A stretch of 63,364 nt of DNA, counting the filler, from Octopus bimaculoides (taxonomy: Eukaryota), in NCBI RefSeq assembly GCF_001194135.2. It is 4 parts of 3 records of this genome, joined end to end, with 100 filler letters (N's around TTAATTAATTAA, not from the genome) between each part and the next. Parts side by side here need not be neighbours in the genome. Positions count along the whole stretch, not along the records: positions 22,585 to 32,075 come from NC_068991.1; 3 more parts are not named here. One strand, 5' to 3'. The position numbers and the translations under genes are program-made. Below, one piece after another: positions 22,585 to 32,175 of this stretch. Every line of letters begins with the position of its first letter. Position 1 is the first letter of the stretch. The notes under the pieces are model-generated. The model saw only the letters and a program-made list of their open reading frames with translations. It searched no databases and was not told the origin of the DNA.

Positions 22585-23209
22585 CTCTATAATGTAAAAA
22601 GTCGGATTTCCTGTAGCAACTTGGTCTTTTCCCCGCTACTAAAAGACATGAAGAACTATGAAAGAATGCGAATAAGTACCGGAGGTGGAGGAAAGAAGGG
22701 AGAACTAACACTTGATCGTTCTAGAACTCCCAGAAAAAAACACCTAAATACCTGAAATATTTTCCCTCTATTCATTACTAAATGTCTTTCTCTCTTCATT
22801 GATGCCATGAGAAATGTTTGTGTATTGTGACAGTTACATAATATAGAAAGAAGTGTAAAACCGATAAGTATATAATCCAACTAAAATGTCACAGTTACGC
22901 AAACGTAAACTGAATTAGTATTTAACCTCAAAATACGTTGTACATATTATAAGAACACTCTTGGTTTAGTGGCACGGAAAGTTCTTCTGGTAGTCTTTTA
23001 CTTGTTTCAGTAATTTGACGGTGGTCAAGCTGGAGCACCGCCCTTTAGTCGAAGAAATCGACTCCTGGACTTATTCTCTGTAAACCTGGTGCTTAATCAA
23101 TCGGCCTTTTCTGCCTAACAGCTAAGTTCCGAGGACGCAAACAGACCAACATCGGTTGTCAAACATTGGTGTGGGAGGGACAAATATAGACACACACACA
23201 TGTACGTAC
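22585..23209. repeat. Diverged paralogue of the UGT downstream region (26265-27135), blocks in permuted order
   Basis: 22800-23205 matches 26265-26665; 22637-22790 matches 26985-27135; 22586-22625 matches 26738-26775. Roughly 85-90% identical by eye. Confidence 0.85.
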
Positions 23210-23917
23210 NNNNNNNNNNNNNNNNNNNNNNNNNNNNNNNNNNNNNNNNNNNNNNNNNNNNNNNNNNNNNNNNNNNNNNNNNNNNNNNNNNNNNNNNNNN
23301 NNNNNNNNNNNNNNNNNNNNNNNNNNNNNNNNNNNNNNNNNNNNNNNNNNNNNNNNNNNNNNNNNNNNNNNNNNNNNNNNNNNNNNNNNNNNNNNNNNNN
23401 NNNNNNNNNNNNNNNNNNNNNNNNNNNNNNNNNNNNNNNNNNNNNNNNNNNNNNNNNNNNNNNNNNNNNNNNNNNNNNNNNNNNNNNNNNNNNNNNNNNN
23501 NNNNNNNNNNNNNNNNNNNNNNNNNNNNNNNNNNNNNNNNNNNNNNNNNNNNNNNNNNNNNNNNNNNNNNNNNNNNNNNNNNNNNNNNNNNNNNNNNNNN
23601 NNNNNNNNNNNNNNNNNNNNNNNNNNNNNNNNNNNNNNNNNNNNNNNNNNNNNNNNNNNNNNNNNNNNNNNNNNNNNNNNNNNNNNNNNNNNNNNNNNNN
23701 NNNNNNNNNNNNNNNNNNNNNNNNNNNNNNNNNNNNNNNNNNNNNNNNNNNNNNNNNNNNNNNNNNNNNNNNNNNNNNNNNNNNNNNNNNNNNNNNNNNN
23801 NNNNNNNNNNNNNNNNNNNNNNNNNNNNNNNNNNNNNNNNNNNNNNNNNNNNNNNNNNNNNNNNNNNNNNNNNNNNNNNNNNNNNNNNNNNNNNNNNNNN
23901 NNNNNNNNNNNNNNNNT

Positions 23918-24187
23918 TATACTAAATAAAGAACTCACGAAAACTTTCCAAAAGGAACAGAACATAAATATCCTTCCAATGAATGAGATACCAGAAATTG
24001 AAGAAATTCGCAGTGCTTCAGAGAAGCAAGAATGTAGAAGAGTATTCGTGATGAAAAAGGCCCTAAATTTATTCCCTCCAGTGTGCGAGAGAATTCTAAG
24101 GGATGAAAAATCGATTGAAATGATGAGAGCAGTGAATGCTAGTTTAGCTGTTATTAATGGATTATTTGTGACAAACTGTCTTACAAT
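23918..24187 (+). repeat. 270-bp exact direct repeat, copy 1 (copy 2 at 31806-32075)
   Basis: No differences seen on base-by-base reading. Offset is 7888 bp. Both copies abut N gaps. Confidence 0.95.
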
Positions 24188-25265
24188 AATTGCTTATAAA
24201 TTGTCAATTCCGTTTGTTCTGACAGGATCTGAGATACTTCCTAGTCTTCATCGTATTCCATGGAACCCCAGTATTTTTCCAAACAGCTTCCTGTCATCCT
24301 CCGATAAAATGACATATTCAGAAAAGTTAATAAGTACTTTGGTTGCTATTGTAGACTACACTATTCTTTCTATTGGAGCACCTACACACAGTGTCAAAAC
24401 ATATGCGAAAGACAAACCTGATATTTCATTCATAGATTTGCTACACCAGGCACAGTTTTTTCTTATTGAAAAAGATGTACTTCTAGATTATCCGCTGCCC
24501 CAACTTCCAAATGTAAGATATGTTGGTGGCCTGGCAGCAAAACATTCATTGCCTTTGAAGGGAGGGTTATTGAATTTCGTAAATGCTTCCACGAATGGAA
24601 TAGTTGTGGTGTCATTTGGCAGTAATATCAATGATTTCCCTGCTGTTCAGCTAGAAAAGCTACAGAGCGCATTGAAACAAATAAAATATGATGTTGTGTG
24701 GAGACAGAAGAAAACATCATTTTCTCATAAGAATATTTATATCAGTGATTGGGTACCACAAAATGATCTGCTTGGCCATCCTAAAACTAAATTATTTGTT
24801 ACTCATTGTGGAAATAGCGGTCAATTTGAAGCTTTGTTCCATGGTGTGCCAATGCTGGGAATACCTTTATTTACAGACCAATTTTATAACTCTCGCAGAA
24901 TGACCGAGAAAGGATACGGATTGTCACTAGATATAGAGAACTTTACCCCGAAGGAATTAATAGAGAAAATAAAAGAACTGATTGAAAATAAAACATATTC
25001 TGAGAAAATTAAAAGAGCTAGTGAAATATTCCACTCCCGACCCGAATATCCATCGAAGAAATCAGCCCGCCATATTGATCACATCTTGAAATACGGTGGA
25101 GAATATCTAAAGTCTCCATGTCAAGAGAGTCGATTGTATGAATTTTTCATGATCGATGTATTGGCTCCTATATTTGTAGTAATATCACTTTTGATATATT
25201 TGACCTGTCTAATTGGGAAAAAATGTTTAACTATCTTTTGTAAGAAGAAAACGAAGACTGACTAA
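23919..25265 (+). CDS. UDP-glycosyltransferase (GT1, metazoan ER-type), 5'-truncated by gap; residues ~58-505, intronless
   Basis: UGT signature WVPQNDLLGHPKTKLFVTHCGNSGQFEALFHGVPMLGIPLFTDQ, GIVVVSFGS motif, C-terminal TM helix, and KKTKTD end fitting a KxKxx ER-retrieval signal. Frame is open from the contig start. Confidence 0.96.
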   Translation: MLNKELTKTFQKEQNINILPMNEIPEIEEIRSASEKQECRRVFVMKKALNLFPPVCERILRDEKSIEMMRAVNASLAVINGLFVTNCLTIIAYKLSIPFVLTGSEILPSLHRIPWNPSIFPNSFLSSSDKMTYSEKLISTLVAIVDYTILSIGAPTHSVKTYAKDKPDISFIDLLHQAQFFLIEKDVLLDYPLPQLPNVRYVGGLAAKHSLPLKGGLLNFVNASTNGIVVVSFGSNINDFPAVQLEKLQSALKQIKYDVVWRQKKTSFSHKNIYISDWVPQNDLLGHPKTKLFVTHCGNSGQFEALFHGVPMLGIPLFTDQFYNSRRMTEKGYGLSLDIENFTPKELIEKIKELIENKTYSEKIKRASEIFHSRPEYPSKKSARHIDHILKYGGEYLKSPCQESRLYEFFMIDVLAPIFVVISLLIYLTCLIGKKCLTIFCKKKTKTD

Positions 25266-25564
25266 ATTATGTTTCGGTAAGCTCAAATATGTAAATCATA
25301 CCTCTTTTGTTTTGCTTTATGTAAATCAAGATCTAACTGCAATAACCCTGAAAGCATAATTTTGTTTTCGTATAGAAATTTTAATTTGCATCGTAATTTA
25401 TCTTCAGCTTTTGTAAACCAACACCCGCTGATTGTTTTTATATGTAATTTTCCCAGATAAAGTGACATTGTATATCCAGTGTCCAACGGACTCCCATCCT
25501 GATGATATATAGAAAAATAACGCAGCCTAATGCAGCCGTTTGTCTTATGTAATGAACATACATA

Positions 25565-25764
25565 AGAGTGACAGAGAGGTGGCTGTGAAAATACTTAGAA
25601 TAAACTTACATCATCAGTGAATTGTAAAAGCTGTGAAAAATTAGTAAATTAATGAAACAGTTACGTACCTATATAACTGTTTACTAATTTTTTCGCAGCC
25701 TTTACAATTCATTGATAAAATAAGTTTATTCTAAATATTTGCACAGCCACCTCCCTGTCACTCT
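25565..25764. mobile_element. Foldback MITE-like element 3' of the UGT stop codon
   Basis: TA|AGAGTGACAG...CTGTCACTCT|TA with ~90-100 nt arms that pair almost to the centre. Confidence 0.75.
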
Positions 25765-28700
25765 TATAATTAAAAATCAGAAATATTAGTCTCATTTGTC
25801 CAAGAATCAAATCAGAATCATTGTCCTTTTCCCCTTTATCTAACGTCTAATTTCACTTCACATCGTTAACATTTGAATTCTGTTTGCATTCTCATATCTG
25901 GTACTAGTTGGAAAACTTGACAGCTACTACGAGACCCAAGGATTAAATTGTGCGCTTCTATCTGTTTTGGCATTGTTTCCTAACGTAAATGCCCTTCCTA
26001 AATACAAAACCTTTGCAGTGTGTACTGGTTGCTTTTTTTGTGCCACGTGCACTAGTGAGATGAAAATGCAGCTGGAAAATGATAACCCGAAGAGAGGCGG
26101 ATTTTATGCTAAAAGATGAGAAGTGAAAGTAAGACGAAAGGAGGCAGAACAGAACAGGTTTCTTGATGTAGTATGAGCACATGACAATTCATATTTTACT
26201 AGCTGGACACGTGAAAATTTCACGGTAAACATAAAAAATATAAGCATCTGTAAATTGATTTCTGGTGCCGTGAGAAATGTTTGTGTATTGTAACAGTTAC
26301 AGAATATAGAAAGAAGTGTAAAACCGATAACTTTATAATCCAACCAAAATACCTCAGTTACTCAAACGTAAACTGAATTACTATTTAGTCTCAAAATGCA
26401 TTGTACATATTAAAAGAACATTCTTGGTTTAGTGCCACGGAACGTTCTTCTGGTAGTCTTTTACTTGTTTCAATAACTTGTCGGTGGTCAAGCTGGAGCA
26501 CCGCCGTTTAGTCGAAGAAATCGACTCCTGCACTTATCTCCTGTAAACCTGGTGATTAATCTATCGGCCTTTTCTGCCTAACAGCTAAGTTCCGAGGACG
26601 CAAACACACCAACATCGGTTGTCAAACAATGGTGTGGGAGAGACAAATATAGACACACACAAACACACATACACACGCACATACATACCTATCAGTTTTC
26701 GTCTACCAAATTCACTCACGAGGCTACAGTAGAAGACACTATAATGTAAAAAGTTGAATTTTCTGTAGCCACCTGTTGGCAACTTTTCTCCCCCATCTAT
26801 TTTGTAGGGGGTGTTACTCAATTTTCTGCGATTTTTTCACAACTATACCACGTTCGAAATTTGCATTAGTTTTTGTATGAAAAATAATAAAGGAAATTAG
26901 TGAGGGGTGCTCGTTTGTATTTGGTAGAGAAAACATTAAACGTGCCTTAAAAAAAATAAAAATAAAAAAAACAACTTCTTCGAAACTAAAAGACATGAAG
27001 AACTATGAAAGAATGCGAATAAATACCGGGGGTGGAGGAAAGAAGGGAGAACTAACACTTGATCGTTCTAGAACTCTCAGAATAAAAACCTAAATACCTT
27101 AAATATTTTCTCCTCTATTCGTTACTAAATGTCTTTCACTTTTTCTTCGTTGTTAAAAGTAAAATTGCTAGAAAAGATCGTCTGAATTTCAGTCTAATTG
27201 TCATTTTAAATGACTGAGGCTTTCCTTTCCCTGACTCTATCCCTTCAATGCTTTCTTCTACGGTTAAGAGTGTGATGGTGAGTGGTTCAGTGGTTAAGGA
27301 TATTCGGCCCACAATCGTAAGGTCATGAGTACGATCCTCGGCGGCGCGCCGTGTTCTTGTGCAAGTCACCCTACATCACCTTGCTGCAGTTCACACGACT
27401 GGCGAGAATGAGTTGTTGCTGTAATTCAAAGGTGTCAGCCATGGCACATTCTGCGTGAAGCTGAATCTCCCTGAGAACAATGTAAATGGTATGCATATCT
27501 GTGGAGTACTCAGTCATTTGTGCGTTAATTTTACGAGCAGACTGTTCTGCTGATCAGATAAACAGGAACCTCGTCGTCGTAACCGACGGAGTGCCAGTTT
27601 TGAAAAAGATTGAGAAAGGAAATGTTTCATATCGTAAGGCAAAAACGTCATGTGTTTAGTATAAACAGTGAAAGCTACGACGAAATAATTGCTATTCCGT
27701 CGTGTATTCGCCCTCGGCTCACGCTCAGTTTGATACCAATAGCCAGCGCATCGGTGTTTAACTGGGGGCTTGGCCTCCAGATCTGTGAGACCCACAAATA
27801 TCGCTGTTAGGACCGGATTAATACCCATAGTGACCCTAACGACTTAAAAGATGTTCCTACCTCTATATAGGATCTTGTTTCGTTTTCTTTGAAACACTTG
27901 AAGGTTTATCTTACTAGATAGCCACTCAGCTAGCCAAAATGAGTTGTAGCTGTAATTGAAAGGGGTCAATATTGACACATTCTGTGTGAGGCTGATTCAC
28001 CTTGACAACTACGTTAATGATATGCATGTCTGTGGAGTACTCAGCCATTTCCGAATTAAATTTATCCTCGTGAAAGTGACGTCCAATATTTGCAGCGTCT
28101 ACGTATCTATGTATCAACTTTCTTTTCCATCTATGTATCTACTGTCTCTCTCACTTTCTCTCTTTTTCTTTCATTTCATCTGTGTCCTTCCTCTCTCCCG
28201 CTTTTAATTTAACAATGTGTTTATGTATCTATGTATCAACTTTTGTTTCGATCTATGTATGTACTTTTCTTGCGATGTGATAAACATTTAAAAATACAAA
28301 ACGAAAGCCGTCACCTCTCACTCCCTCTCTTTCTCTCTTACTCTCTCTTTCTCTCTCACTCTCACTTTCTCTATCACTCTCTATTTCTCTTTCACTCTCT
28401 CTCCTCTCTCACTCTCTCCGTCACCACTCACTGTCTCTTTCACTCTATTTCTCCTTCTCACTCTCTCTCTTTCTCACTTCCTCTCTGAAACATTTAAAAA
28501 CACAAAACGAACGCCGTCAGCACTCACTGTCTCTATCACTCTCTCTCTTTATCTCTCTCACTCTCCATTTTTCACTCTTTCTTTCTTACTTCCTCTGTCC
28601 TCCTCTTTTTTGCTTTGCCACTGATTTCTTCCTTTGAAGTAAATGTGACACACACCGCAGGTAAGGAAAGAAACAACTACAACTAAGCGCATTATTATTA

Positions 28701-29279
28701 TTGATAAGATTGGGTGGAGGTGATCGGGTGGAGCGGAGAAGAGATAAAATAGTGGTGATGGGTTGCCCGTGTCTTCTTTCAAAGTAAAAGGTGAGTAAAA
28801 GTGAATGGAAGCAGCAGAACGGTAGATCTAGCAAAAGTGAATGGGAGAATGAGTAATGAGAAGGAAGGGAGTGACTATAATGAAAGAAGAAACGTTGAGT
28901 GTTCATAAAAGGGTGGAAGAAATTGGGAAGCGTGGTGAATGCTGTAGTAAATGGTGGATAAAGGGTGAGGGTGACCAATTATGCATGGCGGTGGGGAGGG
29001 GAAGAGCAGCAGAACAGTAATATTGGTTCGGTATACAAGGTAAGGAAGCGAGAAAGAGAGAGAAAGTTAGAGAGAGAAAGGCGGTTAGAGAAAGTGATGA
29101 TTTGACAGGTTGTAAGAGTGTAGGGAAAGGGGAGAGAGAGGCAGCTGGAGGGCATGGGGTGGCTAAGAAGGAGAAATTAAAAATTGCTTTGCTATTCATT
29201 ACTGAGTTGGATAGTCACGTATGGGGTTTGATATCTAATGCAACACCACATGTGATTAAGTGAAAGGTAATTGAAAAAT

Positions 29280-30360
29280 CCACACTTATTTTAATGGACC
29301 AAATAAATGTAAAATATGTTCAGCTGAAAGAACTCAGCTCCTTTTCAGATCCAAGATCCCTAACTCATCACTGAACTCTAGGTCTGAAATTTTCAGGGGT
29401 TGTAAACATATGTCTAAGTACGTTTTGAAGAATTGAAAAATTCCACCTATATCTGATCAACTTGTTGTTATCTTTCCAGCCTTATAAAACATTTCATTAT
29501 AATGCCCCAGCTGCAGCATCATGTCTCATCGGTAGATGATACCGTGATGAAATTTTCAGACAACTGCTTATGATGTCGGTGATATCTTTGGTGTTAATTC
29601 CACAAAGTCTGCATCGGTTGTCACATTTTACTGCTTTTCTTGCACCTCTATCCCTTTTGTGCATCGGGAACTTGGTTGATGTTCCTTTTCCTTGATTGCA
29701 AACGCATTCCCTTCAAAGTGGAAAGTAGTAATCGTGCTATTGGTCCATGATAGACTGCTTTGATGATTAATGTTACTGTCATCTTGGAGCTATCTACTAG
29801 TATATCCATGCATGGTTTTCTGCTTATACAGGCTCATCCTTTCATATGATGATATGTTGCGGTAGAGTCGTGCGACATATTTGGTCATGTATTCTAGGTT
29901 ATGACAGAGCGTTGCTCGATGAGCTACCTTCCATCTCTTATGATGTTATCAACCTCATGTATGCAAACTTGATCAAGGGATGCAGTTCGACACTTTGTGA
30001 TTAAAGGATGTTGCCGAAGGGATATGATACAACAGTCAAATGTATTTTGGATCAATGTTAAGCCTCTGCCGCCTTGTTTTCATTTTTGGAAGAGGTGGTC
30101 TACGTCACTATTTATGTGGAAATGATTTGTGCTTGTCAGTATTTTTCGGGTTTTGACATCAATGGCTCAGATCTCATCAAGTGTCCAATCAAGCTGCCAA
30201 AATATGGGTATGAGTACTAGCACTGCAAACACATTGTGGGCCAATGTTTCATTGAATGCAAAGAGTTCTGACGTCCAAATTTTCTTTATTGGGCTGTAAT
30301 ATTCTTTAGTGACAGGTGTTTTGTTACAGGTGTCATTGTAAGATATGTTTTCATTCACCC
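29280..30360 (-). mobile_element. Degenerate RLE-type (R4/R2/NeSL-like) non-LTR retrotransposon
   Basis: Minus strand 29690-29510 reads DNRCRLCGINTKDITDIISSCLKISSRYHLPMRHD, a decayed CCHC knuckle plus RHD motif. Outer limits approximate. Confidence 0.7.
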
Positions 30361-30810
30361 CTAGAAACCTATAACATTATTTGTCAGATATATGGGACAC
30401 AGTCAATCATTGATGGAGTAGTTGCTAGTGTGGTTTATAGTTTTCCCTCTTTTCCCAACAACCATATAACAACATAATTTATGTAAACCGAAAAGAAGAG
30501 TAGCAATATTCAGACGAGCTTGTGTTAAAACGAAAAACATAATGCCGAAAATTGGTAAAATGAAATCCAAGAACAAAGTGAATTAAAGTAAAAAAGAAAA
30601 AGAGAAGAAACGAAGAATTACTAAAAAGAGACAGAAATGTTATTTTGACGTAAAATAATAGATGTTGAAAATTGTATGTATGTATGTATGTATATATGTA
30701 TGTATGTATATACATACATACACCCCCCACATATATGTATATAATTACATATGCATATATACTAACGTATATATGCGTATGTATGTATGTATGTATGTAT
30801 GTGTGTATGT

Positions 30811-31142
30811 GAAGGCACATGGCTCAGTGGTTAGAGCGTCGAGTTTACGATCGTGAGGTTGTGAGTTCGAATCCCGGACCGAGCTGCGTGTTGTGTTCTT
30901 GAGCAAGACACTTTATTTCACGTTGCTCTATTTCACTGAACTGTAGAAATGAGTCGCGACGTCACAGGTACCAAGCTGTATCAGCATTTGCCTTTCCCTT
31001 GGATAACATTGGTGGCTTGGATAGGGGAGACCGGTATGTATGGGTGACTGCTAGTCTTCCATAAACACCCTTGCCTGGACCTGTGCCCGGGTGGGTAACT
31101 TTCTAGGTGCAATTCCATGGTCAGTCATGACCGAAGGGAATC
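30811..31142 (+). mobile_element. SINE family 3 with intact Pol III A and B boxes
   Basis: A box TGGCTCAGTGG at 30820 and B box GTTCGAATC at 30865. Relatives at ~27280-27600, 38770-39090(-) and 40715-41090. Confidence 0.85.
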
Positions 31143-31198
31143 TCAGCATGTATGTATGTATGTATGTATGTATGTATGTATGTATGTATGTATGTATG

Positions 31199-31229
<31 letters not shown>

Positions 31230-31589
31230 TTATCTAATGTACACATTTACGTATATCAATGTATATATGCACACGCATGCATCTATGTATGAGGTTTGTA
31301 TATATTTATGCTTCTGTATTTGTACAGAAATATGGTTCTATTAATTCTATGGATATATTAATTAGTACTAAGGTAGTTATGTGCTTTGTTGCTGTTTAAA
31401 AGATATGCATAAACCATTTCTAATAAAGCTCTAAATAGTTTGGTTAGTGTATCGAAGTTACTATACAAATTTGCTACCATAATTTTGGCATTGTGGTGAC
31501 GGATGAGGTGAGACAGTCATAAGACACAAGTTGCTTTCCTTCCATCGCAAATATCATTCGAATATATAATCACAAATTTATTCATATGT

Positions 31590-31617
31590 CTTTCTATATC
31601 TTTTCTCTTTTTTTTAG
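31590..31617 (+). promoter_or_regulatory. Polypyrimidine tract and AG splice acceptor of a 5'-UTR intron of the UGT
   Basis: ctttctatatcttttctcttttttttag|gtcaac lies 18 nt upstream of the ATG. Confidence 0.6.
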
Positions 31618-31635
31618 GTCAACACCTCCTGAAAA

Positions 31636-32075
31636 ATGATAGAGAAGAATCTGTTTTTCTGTTTAATGGTGCTATGCATCATTGTACGTCTAGAAAGAGT
31701 CAACAGTAAAAATATTTTATACATAGCATGGCCTGCTTACAGTTATGTATATCCAATGATTTCTATAGCAAACGAATTATCAAAGTATGGACATAATAAC
31801 TATTTTATACTAAATAAAGAACTCACGAAAACTTTCCAAAAGGAACAGAACATAAATATCCTTCCAATGAATGAGATACCAGAAATTGAAGAAATTCGCA
31901 GTGCTTCAGAGAAGCAAGAATGTAGAAGAGTATTCGTGATGAAAAAGGCCCTAAATTTATTCCCTCCAGTGTGCGAGAGAATTCTAAGGGATGAAAAATC
32001 GATTGAAATGATGAGAGCAGTGAATGCTAGTTTAGCTGTTATTAATGGATTATTTGTGACAAACTGTCTTACAAT
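31636..32075 (+). CDS. UDP-glycosyltransferase N-terminus (signal peptide, residues 1-146), 3'-truncated by gap
   Basis: MIEKNLFFCLMVLCIIVRLERVNS signal-like peptide followed by NILYIAWPAYSYVYPMISIANELSKYGH, the UGT N-terminal strand/helix. 31806-32075 is identical to 23918-24187. Confidence 0.93.
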
Positions 32076-32175
32076 NNNNNNNNNNNNNNNNNNNNNNNNN
32101 NNNNNNNNNNNNNNNNNNNTTAATTAATTAANNNNNNNNNNNNNNNNNNNNNNNNNNNNNNNNNNNNNNNNNNNN

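What the first reader, a model, noticed from the sequence alone, without database searches (positions are those of the whole stretch)
23918..32075. Terminally redundant 7888-bp unit carrying a circularly permuted complete UGT gene
Seen: this gap-free contig starts and ends with the same 270 bp. The UGT 3' part is at its start and the 5' part at its end. Joining the ends gives one intact 505-aa ORF (77+428 aa). Inference: a head-to-tail array of near-identical copies collapsed by the assembler, meaning a very recent amplification of a detoxification or glycosylation gene. A circular DNA or a plain assembly error are the alternatives.
Basis: partly seen in the sequence, partly recalled or inferred. 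Interest (0 to 1): 0.75.

Follow-up and report, generated by a model that had tools for sequence, protein, structure and literature searches.

The report
Assembly-duplicated end of an octopus UGT gene
The identical 271-bp contig ends are real in the sequence, but reads from four animals show that stretch once per genome, so this is most likely an assembly artefact splitting one ordinary octopus UGT gene within an old tandem array.

Summary
Contig 23917-32075 (8159 bp, no N) has identical ends, 23917-24187 = 31805-32075 (271 bp, not 270). Joining them gives a 505-aa UDP-glycosyltransferase ORF.

The piece is Octopus bimaculoides GCA_001194135.2, chromosome CM046611.1, about 29.065-29.075 Mb. 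It lies in a gap-ridden head-to-tail array of at least six UGT units that are 79-97% identical to it. A similar array exists in the gap-free O. vulgaris assembly, so the array is old.

The repeat's core (24016-24123 = 31904-32011) distinguishes this unit from its closest assembled paralog (15 differences). Its k-mer depth is single-copy in three resequenced animals and in the 2015 sample. It matches the depth of the unit's other private segments and of unrelated repeat-junction contigs (ratios 0.78-1.17). Segments shared with one paralog sit near 2x.

So the assembly holds the repeat twice and the reads once. That is a false duplication: a circularly permuted contig of a single-copy unit. A collapsed recent amplification and an amplified circle both predict excess depth, which is absent.

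The 505-aa gene is probably real and is strongly transcribed. I could not find where the spacer is misjoined, and no long-read runs were listed.

In passing: the whole coding sequence is one exon, and a donor 11 nt past the stop splices into another unit's coding exon.

The parts
23917..24187 (+). Left copy of the 271-bp terminal repeat (X). It holds codons 58-147 of the UGT and starts right after a 707-N gap.
   Evidence: 100% identical to 31805-32075.
31805..32075 (+). Right copy of the terminal repeat (X). It ends at a 2900-N gap in the chromosome record.
24016..24123 (+). Core of the repeat (= 31904-32011). It differs at 15 sites from paralog U4, the closest assembled copy, and is spanned by the diagnostic unitig 23986-24153 = 31874-32041.
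   Evidence: Differences from U4. Unitig depth 45.8 / 48 / 49.3 in X1 / X2 / X3, about 1x. Present twice in the assembly, once in the reads.
31764..31903 (+). Segment shared exactly with paralog U4 (= 23876-24015). The left contig end, 23917, lies inside it.
   Evidence: Depth 94.1 / 101.2 / 93, about 2x. Identity to U4 over 31776-31903.
24124..24197 (+). Second segment shared with U4 (= 32012-32085). The right contig end, 32075 = 24187, lies 10 nt before the A/G fork between this unit and U4 at 24198.
   Evidence: Depth 107.8 / 100.2 / 119. Fork position.
31753..31793 (+). 41-nt block shared among paralogs, with high summed depth. The left contig end falls 12 nt after its equivalent.
   Evidence: Summed depth about 590 in X1, very roughly a dozen copies. 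Conservation shown in the alignment.
31618..31804 (+). Start of the coding exon (segment A). AG acceptor at 31616-31617 after a pyrimidine tract, ATG at 31636.
   Evidence: RNA contigs begin exactly at 31618 and carry an unrelated upstream leader exon ending ...CCGAAAAATCTTGGTATTTCAA. The acceptor is conserved in U2 and in three O. vulgaris units.
23917..25265 (+). 3' 449 codons of the UGT coding sequence (X plus B). Stop TAA at 25263-25265.
   Evidence: RNA contigs with 0 mismatches at depth about 800-1850 in X25 and about 280-900 in X26.
25277..25282 (+). GTAAGC splice donor 11 nt after the stop codon.
   Evidence: RNA depth falls from about 1800 to 46 here. Contigs join 25276 to GTCAAA..., in X30 to GTCAAAACCTCTTGAAAAATGATAGAGAAGAA, the start of a U2-type UGT exon.
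25283..31615 (.). Spacer between UGT units. It contains very high-copy repeats (26157-28090, 29474-30360), (TGTA)n runs (30657-30815, 31133-31236) and CT-rich tracts (28282-28606). No protein domain was found in its ORFs.
   Evidence: Colinear at 87-94% identity with the U1-to-U2 and U3-to-U4 spacers of the same chromosome.
22585..23209 (.). Separate 625-bp contig of repeat sequence, placed 707 N upstream. It is 92-95% identical to 26263-26661 and 26985-27137.
   Evidence: Its first 190 nt are 100% identical to L001 15246-15435, another contig edge beside a gap.

Best explanation
The 8159-bp contig is a circularly permuted, falsely duplicated representation of a single-copy unit. That unit lies in an old, diverged head-to-tail array of UDP-glycosyltransferase genes on Octopus bimaculoides chromosome CM046611.1.

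Shown: the real gene reads leader exon, acceptor at 31616-17, then one exon of about 1.55 kb, in the order A (31618-31804), X, B (24188-25276). That exon encodes a 505-aa ER-type UGT.

Shown: more than half of the contig's 31-mers also occur in neighbouring paralog units, so the short-read assembly graph is tangled here. Both contig ends fall beside forks. The left end is 12 nt after a 41-mer shared among paralogs. The right end is 10 nt before the fork between this unit and paralog U4.

Inferred: the stretch between the two forks (X) was written onto both the piece ending in A and the piece beginning with B. The two pieces were then linked through the repeat-rich spacer in the wrong cyclic order, so the gene's 5' third sits 7.9 kb downstream of its 3' part.

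Nothing biological is amplified or circular here.
For: 1. Location and context. The piece matches GCA_001194135.2 CM046611.1 with 0 mismatches over 9491 bases. L001 and L003 show at least six same-strand UGT units, 79-97% identical to this one, spaced about 6.5-10 kb apart, with 15 N gaps.

2. Copy number. Contigs private to this unit have these k-mer depths. In X1: 42.7, 52.4, 45.8 (repeat core), 51.5, 46.4, 48.1, 53.4, 47.3, against a baseline median of 49.1 from unrelated repeat-junction contigs (ratio 0.97). The ratio is 0.95 in X2, 0.78 in X3 and 1.17 in X8. Segments shared with paralog U4 are 1.5-2.2x. Pooled 2015-sample runs X8 + X10 give 44.1 for the repeat core against 49.3, 50.7 and 46.1 for other private segments.

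3. One path. At both shared segments the second path is U4: 15 sites in the core, plus 24198 and 24244-24301. A, X and B therefore form one single-copy path.

4. Contig ends lie beside graph forks.

5. RNA. The exact A, X and B sequences are all transcribed. A receives only a leader exon. The donor after B, in contigs carrying this unit's own letters 25136T and 25177T, splices to a U2-type acceptor exon (GTCAAAACC...) and not to this contig's own A (GTCAACACC). The contig after the 2900-N gap is nearly identical to U2 over the aligned stretch, whereas A-X is only 87% identical to U2.

6. Gene form. 505-aa single-exon ORFs with the same acceptor are found in two of the three full O. vulgaris units.

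7. The pattern meets published criteria for false duplications: read k-mer multiplicity below assembly copy number, and gaps beside the copies (PMC9516828).
Against: The spacer of this contig is colinear over its whole length with two independent paralogous spacers, U1-to-U2 and U3-to-U4. It therefore looks like an intact inter-gene spacer, and I could not locate a misjoin.

Depths come from Logan contigs at k = 31. These drop variants and pop bubbles. The 2015 sample is noisy: the repeat core is 33.4 in X8, 10.7 in X10 and absent in X11.

I could not confirm that the 2015 sample is the animal that was assembled. X1-X3 are other animals, so a duplication private to the reference animal is not strictly excluded.

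The baseline comes from repeat-junction contigs, not from a known single-copy gene.

The phasing of A to the repeat core across the 128-nt-plus shared segment rests on elimination, not on a spanning read.
Confidence: 0.68

Rival explanations
1. The contig is correct. Two adjacent UGT genes (n = ...X-B, n+1 = A-X...) truly share an identical stretch of at least 271 bp, for example a gene-conversion tract. The contig simply runs from one gene into the next and stops at forks. The 505-aa joined ORF would then be a chimera of two genes.
For: The order B, spacer, A is how the array is built, and the spacer is colinear with the U1-to-U2 and U3-to-U4 spacers. Contig ends lie at forks. In X8 the repeat core is 33.4 against 21.2 upstream. 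RNA depth of A is lower than that of X: 253 vs 903 in X25, 39.6 vs 284 in X26.
Against: The repeat core would have to be 2x and the U4-shared segments 3x. Observed values are about 1x and about 2x in X1, X2 and X3, and about 1x in pooled X8 + X10. The donor after B does not splice to A in RNA. A-X (87% identical to U2) followed by a nearly U2-identical 3' part after the gap would make an odd mosaic gene.
Confidence: 0.13
2. The whole 7888-bp unit is present as two or more near-identical head-to-tail copies that the assembler collapsed. The duplication may be polymorphic and carried by the reference animal.
For: Terminal redundancy is the classic signature of a collapsed tandem repeat. The locus is duplication-prone. 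29110-29421 is 2.3-2.9x in X1 and X2.
Against: All private segments are about 1x of baseline in X1, X2, X3 and X8. Units that are assembled nearby differ by 3-21%. A similar array exists in O. vulgaris, so no recent burst is needed.
Confidence: 0.07
3. The duplication is an artefact, but A does not belong to X-B. The true 5' end of the X-B gene is another variant, for example the second N-terminal type seen in U1 and U3, and A belongs to a neighbouring gene. The 505-aa ORF would then be a chimera.
For: U1 and U3 combine the second N-terminal type with a 3' part 94-97% identical to this unit's. A fragment of that type lies upstream in the scaffold at L003 5117-5488. A-to-core phasing crosses a shared segment of at least 128 nt.
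Against: Paralog U4's core is linked to the other upstream sequence in a 562-nt X12 contig, which leaves A for this core. The contig itself joins A to the core. RNA contigs of A and of the shared segment plus core are both exact in runs where U4-type RNA is absent.
Confidence: 0.09
4. The unit is an extrachromosomal circular DNA of 7888 bp carrying the UGT gene.
For: Only the geometry: identical ends, and an ORF closed by joining them.
Against: Depth is single-copy and equal across animals. No replication or mobilisation gene was found in the spacer ORFs. The unit sits in a chromosomal array of homologous units with the same order. Hi-C scaffolding placed it on a chromosome.
Confidence: 0.01

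Closest known systems
False ('homotype') duplications in short-read, gap-filled assemblies (Ko et al. 2022, Genome Biol 23:205, PMC9516828)
   Same: Sequence is present twice in the assembly but at single-copy k-mer multiplicity in reads. Both copies abut assembly gaps. The error produces a truncated gene model (a 428-aa product starting at Met78) plus a stray 5' fragment.
   Different: The two copies are the two ends of one contig, a circular permutation, rather than flanking a single gap. Discordant read pairs could not be examined here.
Tandem UGT gene clusters of animals (vertebrate UGT2, insect UGTs, the cephalopod 'UGT2A1-related' expansion reported for Sepia officinalis, PMC13218726)
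   Same: Head-to-tail paralogs on one strand. The N-terminal (acceptor-binding) part is variable and the C-terminal (UDP-sugar) half is conserved: 75-87% vs 97.6% identity to P0001. ER-type architecture with signal peptide, signature motif and C-terminal anchor.
   Different: The coding sequence here is a single exon. The units are neither identical nor recent. Nothing about this unit's copy number is unusual.
Read-through or conjoined transcripts between tandem genes, and variable-exon clusters such as UGT1A and the protocadherins
   Same: A splice donor just after the stop of one unit is joined to the acceptor just before the ATG of another unit. A distant leader exon feeds the coding exon.
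   Different: In UGT1A and the protocadherins the variable exons encode only the N-terminal part and share constant 3' exons. Here each exon encodes a complete protein. The post-stop GT donor is present only in some units (this one and U1); U2 and O. vulgaris have GATAAG there. Whether the leader is shared among units was not tested.

Membership tests
UDP-glycosyltransferase (GT1, Pfam PF00201 UDPGT) | Full-length match to the UDPGT profile above the gathering score | tested here: met
   E = 3.9e-74, 250.7 bits against a cut-off of 19.5, residues 88-502 on profile positions 76-497 of 499.
UDP-glycosyltransferase (GT1, Pfam PF00201 UDPGT) | UGT signature motif (PROSITE PS00375 pattern, written from memory) in the C-terminal domain | tested here: met
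   WVPQNDLLGHPKTKLFVTHCGNSGQFEALFHGVPMLGIPLFTDQ at residues 335-378.
UDP-glycosyltransferase (GT1, Pfam PF00201 UDPGT) | ER-type topology: N-terminal hydrophobic signal, C-terminal transmembrane anchor, basic tail | tested here: met
   The N-terminus is MIEKNLFFCLMVLCIIVRL. The hydropathy maximum is at residues 465-490. The tail is KKCLTIFCKKKTKTD. This is a simple hydropathy scan, not a dedicated predictor.
UDP-glycosyltransferase (GT1, Pfam PF00201 UDPGT) | Enzymatic transfer of a UDP-sugar to an acceptor | not testable with these tools
   Needs expression and an assay. Sugar donor and acceptor are unknown.
True tandem or segmental duplication of the 7888-bp unit | Read k-mer multiplicity of unit-private sequence at least twice the single-copy level | tested here: not met
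   Ratios to baseline are 0.97, 0.95, 0.78 and 1.17 in X1, X2, X3 and X8.
True tandem or segmental duplication of the 7888-bp unit | Single molecules spanning two copies | not testable with these tools
   No PacBio or Nanopore runs were listed.
False duplication in an assembly (criteria of PMC9516828) | Assembly copy number exceeds read k-mer multiplicity | tested here: met
   The repeat core occurs twice in the assembly and at about 1x in reads of four samples.
False duplication in an assembly (criteria of PMC9516828) | Assembly gap beside or between the duplicated copies | tested here: met
   707 N lie immediately before 23917 and 2900 N immediately after 32075 in CM046611.1.
False duplication in an assembly (criteria of PMC9516828) | Discordant read pairs, or a stretch unsupported by reads, at the false join | tested here: inconclusive
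Exact-contig coverage is thin at 25600-25880 and 30514-30650, but an inverted repeat and a microsatellite explain that equally well.
Extrachromosomal circular DNA or episome | Depth decoupled from chromosomal depth, and/or own replication functions | tested here: not met
   Depth is 1x in all samples. No Pfam domain in the six spacer ORFs scanned.

The most novel reading that the evidence does not exclude
The octopus UGT array may be organised as 'whole-protein cassette exons'. Each complete 505-aa coding sequence would be one internal exon, with an acceptor 18 nt before the ATG and, in some units, a donor 11 nt after the stop. The exons would be fed from a distant, possibly shared leader exon, and units would be chained by splicing into multi-ORF transcripts. 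The stop lies too close to the junction to trigger nonsense-mediated decay (the roughly 50-nt rule, from my own knowledge). This would be a variable-exon cluster that selects entire enzymes rather than N-terminal domains.
Probability: 0.2. Interest if true: 0.5.

Novelty: not a real feature. Interest (0 to 1): 0.12.

Why it matters
Mostly as a caution. In the public O. bimaculoides chromosome assembly this UGT appears as a truncated 428-aa product plus a stray 5' fragment, and it could be miscounted as two genes or read as a recent amplification.

Counts of detoxification-gene 'expansions' in cephalopods that rely on this short-read assembly will be distorted in this array. The 38 kb I examined around the locus holds 15 gaps.

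The real biology is ordinary: an old tandem UGT cluster with variable N-terminal and conserved C-terminal halves. The inter-unit splicing is a modest lead for anyone annotating the cluster.

Tried and rejected
I worked in sub-stretches instead.

I used unrelated repeat-junction contigs as the baseline.

3. Searches for PacBio or Nanopore runs listed none. The 2026 raw Illumina runs would give under 1x at the 2-Gb read cap, so I did not use them.

4. I first read the sequence ACAAGCATGACC...CACGTAAAC, seen as loose ends upstream of 31753, as the true 5' end of the X-B gene. It is a 5'-truncated fragment of the second N-terminal type (L003 5117-5146) that shares the conserved 41-mer.

5. I considered that about 49x in X1 might be haploid depth, with this unit and U4 as alleles. 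I rejected this. More than ten unrelated repeat junctions sit at the same depth. Three animals show the same 1:1:2 pattern. U4 and this unit have separate places and flanks in the assembly.

6. The 5' leader exon was not found in the window or in L001-L004, allowing up to 4 mismatches.

7. P0001 (XP_014776558.1, 91% identical) is not this gene. It carries U4's version of X.

8. Spacer ORFs have no Pfam domains.

9. The 2015 genome paper was not held in the library. That the assembler was Meraculous is my recollection only.
Full report
**Observation**

The piece holds two contigs. The first is 22585-23209 (625 bp). Then come 707 N, then the second contig, 23917-32075 (8159 bp, no N).
- The repeat finder and a direct string comparison show 23917-24187 = 31805-32075: 271 bp, 100% identical, spacing 7888 bp.
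- Reading 31636-31804 and then 23917-25265 gives a 505-aa ORF.
- The ORF matches Pfam UDPGT at 3.9e-74. It has the UGT signature motif at residues 335-378, an N-terminal hydrophobic segment and a C-terminal anchor.

**Where it is**

The closest proteins are Octopus bimaculoides UGTs at 91%, 87% and 83% identity. The joined 505-aa protein itself is not on record.

The 428-aa ORF from 23979 is on record in GCA_001194135.2, chromosome CM046611.1. Locus L003 (29,056,507-29,077,793) matches the whole 9491-base piece with 0 mismatches.

L001 plus L003 cover about 38 kb and show at least six same-strand UGT units:
- They are 79-97% identical to this contig.
- Their spacing is about 6.5-10 kb.
- They are interrupted by 15 N gaps.

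The contig's order (3' part of a UGT, spacer, 5' part of a UGT) is the order of the array. Its spacer is colinear with the U1-to-U2 and U3-to-U4 spacers at 87-94% identity. Relative to the U1-to-U2 spacer it has an extra 2.4 kb.

The gap-free O. vulgaris chromosome OX597824.1 (L004) has a similar array. Two of its three full units carry intact 505-aa single-exon ORFs, and all three keep the acceptor just upstream of the ATG. The array is therefore old, not a recent burst.

**Copy number**

Only Logan contigs (k = 31) were useful. The closest paralog, U4 (L003 2940-4049), compares with this contig as follows:
- It is identical over 31776-31903 and over 32012 to 24197.
- It differs at 15 sites in 31904-32011, at 24198, and at 24244-24301.

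The unitig 31874-32041 (= 23986-24153) is therefore private to this contig's repeat.

| Run | Upstream 31372-31540 | A 31567-31780 | U4-shared 31764-31903 | Repeat core | U4-shared 32012 onward |
|---|---|---|---|---|---|
| X1 | 42.7 | 52.4 | 94.1 | 45.8 | 107.8 |
| X2 | 56.3 | 62.3 | 101.2 | 48 | 100.2 |
| X3 | 45.6 | 44.1 | 93 | 49.3 | 119 |

Private spacer unitigs lie in the same range as the core, 41-72 across the three runs.

Contigs from unrelated genomic copies of the spacer's repeats serve as a single-copy baseline. Their medians are 49.1 (X1), 55 (X2), 61 (X3) and 18.8 (X8). The ratios of private sequence to baseline are 0.97, 0.95, 0.78 and 1.17.

The 2015 sample is noisy per run. 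Pooled X8 + X10 give 44.1 for the core against 49.3, 50.7 and 46.1 for other private segments.

So the repeat core has the same copy number as everything else private to the contig, about one per haploid genome. Segments shared with one paralog are about 2x.
- If the contig were literally true, the core would be 2x and the shared segments 3x.
- If the unit were a collapsed multi-copy array or an amplified circle, all private segments would be raised.
- Neither is seen.

**Why the contig looks like this**

57% of the contig's bases lie in 31-mers that also occur in neighbouring units, so the assembly graph is tangled here.
- The left end (23917 = 31805) is 12 nt past a 41-mer (31753-31793) shared among paralogs, with summed depth about 590 in X1.
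- The right end (32075 = 24187) is 10 nt before the 24198 fork with U4.
- X is therefore the stretch between two forks.

My inference is that X was attached both to the piece ending in A and to the piece starting with B. The two pieces were then chained through the repeat-rich spacer in the wrong cyclic order.

This fits the published signature of false duplications: read multiplicity below assembly copy number, and gaps beside the copies (PMC9516828).

I could not find the misjoin itself. The spacer looks like a complete paralog of other spacers, which is the main weakness of this account.

**RNA**

The exact sequence of X and B is abundantly transcribed in X25 and X26, at depths of 280-1850 with 0 mismatches.

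A is transcribed too. Its contigs start exactly at 31618, after the AG at 31616-17, and continue upstream into an unrelated leader exon (...CCGAAAAATCTTGGTATTTCAA). That leader is absent from the window and from L001-L004.

Depth collapses at 25278. A GTAAGC donor sits 11 nt after the stop codon. Contigs carrying this unit's own letters (25136T, 25177T) join it to GTCAAA.... In X30 the join is to GTCAAAACCTCTTGAAAAATGATAGAGAAGAA, the start of the U2-type coding exon, not to this contig's own A (GTCAACACC).

The contig after the 2900-N gap is almost identical to U2 over the aligned stretch, while A-X is only 87% identical to U2.

Together this suggests that the gene downstream of B is a U2-like gene and that A belongs in front of X-B. 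That agrees with the depth result.

**Verdict**

The terminal redundancy is real in the file but most probably not in the animal (confidence 0.68). The joined 505-aa gene is probably a true single-copy member of an old UGT array.

The rivals are:
- Two adjacent genes that truly share X (0.13).
- An artefact in which A belongs to a different gene (0.09).
- A recent or polymorphic whole-unit duplication (0.07).
- A circle (0.01).

Interest is low. The useful outputs are a flagged assembly and annotation error, and a side observation on splicing between units.

Noticed in passing
window 25263-25282 and 31600-31640: The whole 505-aa coding sequence is one exon. It has an AG acceptor 18 nt before the ATG and a GTAAGC donor 11 nt after the stop. 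In X25, most RNA with this 3' end (about 1190 of 1288) is spliced from that donor into the start of another unit's coding exon (U2 type), giving multi-ORF transcripts.
   Followed up: partly
upstream of window 31618 (RNA contigs of X25 and X26): The coding exon is fed by a leader exon ending ...TTTATACACCGAAAAATCTTGGTATTTCAA. That sequence is not in the window nor in about 80 kb of fetched loci (L001-L004). It is either far away or in a gap, and it could be shared by several units.
   Followed up: partly
L001 5125-5141 and 11519-11580; L004 6972-7030 and 11288-11350: The post-stop GT donor exists only in this unit and U1 (CGGTAAGC). U2 and both O. vulgaris units have TTTGATAAG there. The donor therefore looks like a lineage-specific gain in some units.
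   Followed up: yes
window 24366-24371: This unit encodes Ile-Leu-Ser where every other paralog and ortholog has Ile-Pro-Pro (DYTIPPIGAP). The variant is present in abundant RNA (X25, X26), so it is not an assembly error.
   Followed up: partly
L001 3521-3901 and 12152-12479; L003 5117-5488: A second N-terminal type, 78-85% identical to this unit's, is combined in U1 and U3 with 3' parts that are 94-97% identical to this unit's. The paralogs are mosaics: variable N-terminal parts, homogenised C-terminal half (97.6% vs 75% identity to P0001).
   Followed up: partly
window 22585-22774 vs L001 15246-15435: The first 190 nt of the small upstream contig are 100% identical to another contig edge that abuts a gap 27 kb upstream. 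This may be a second falsely duplicated or misplaced piece in the same scaffold.
   Followed up: no
window 29110-29421: Spacer unitigs that match exactly are 2.3-2.9x single-copy depth in X1 and X2, but only about 1.2x their neighbours in the 2015 sample (X8, X10). No second exact copy is assembled nearby. This could be a copy-number or gene-conversion difference between animals, or the shared segment that closes the false cycle.
   Followed up: partly
window 26577-26716, 27557-27696, 29526-29629: Short segments with summed k-mer depth of 1.5-3.3 x 10^5 against about 50 for single copy. That implies thousands of genomic copies, so these are very abundant interspersed repeats inside the spacer.
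   Followed up: no
window 25562-25640 and 25689-25767: A 79-nt inverted repeat (89% complementary, 48-nt loop) lies about 300 nt downstream of the stop. It is conserved in the downstream flanks of U1 and U3. Exact-contig coverage is thin here in all DNA runs.
   Followed up: no
L004 5454-6971 and 9770-11287: In O. vulgaris the called products are 428 aa, starting at the Met78 equivalent, although intact 505-aa ORFs with signal peptides start 231 nt upstream. The public models are probably N-terminally truncated.
   Followed up: partly
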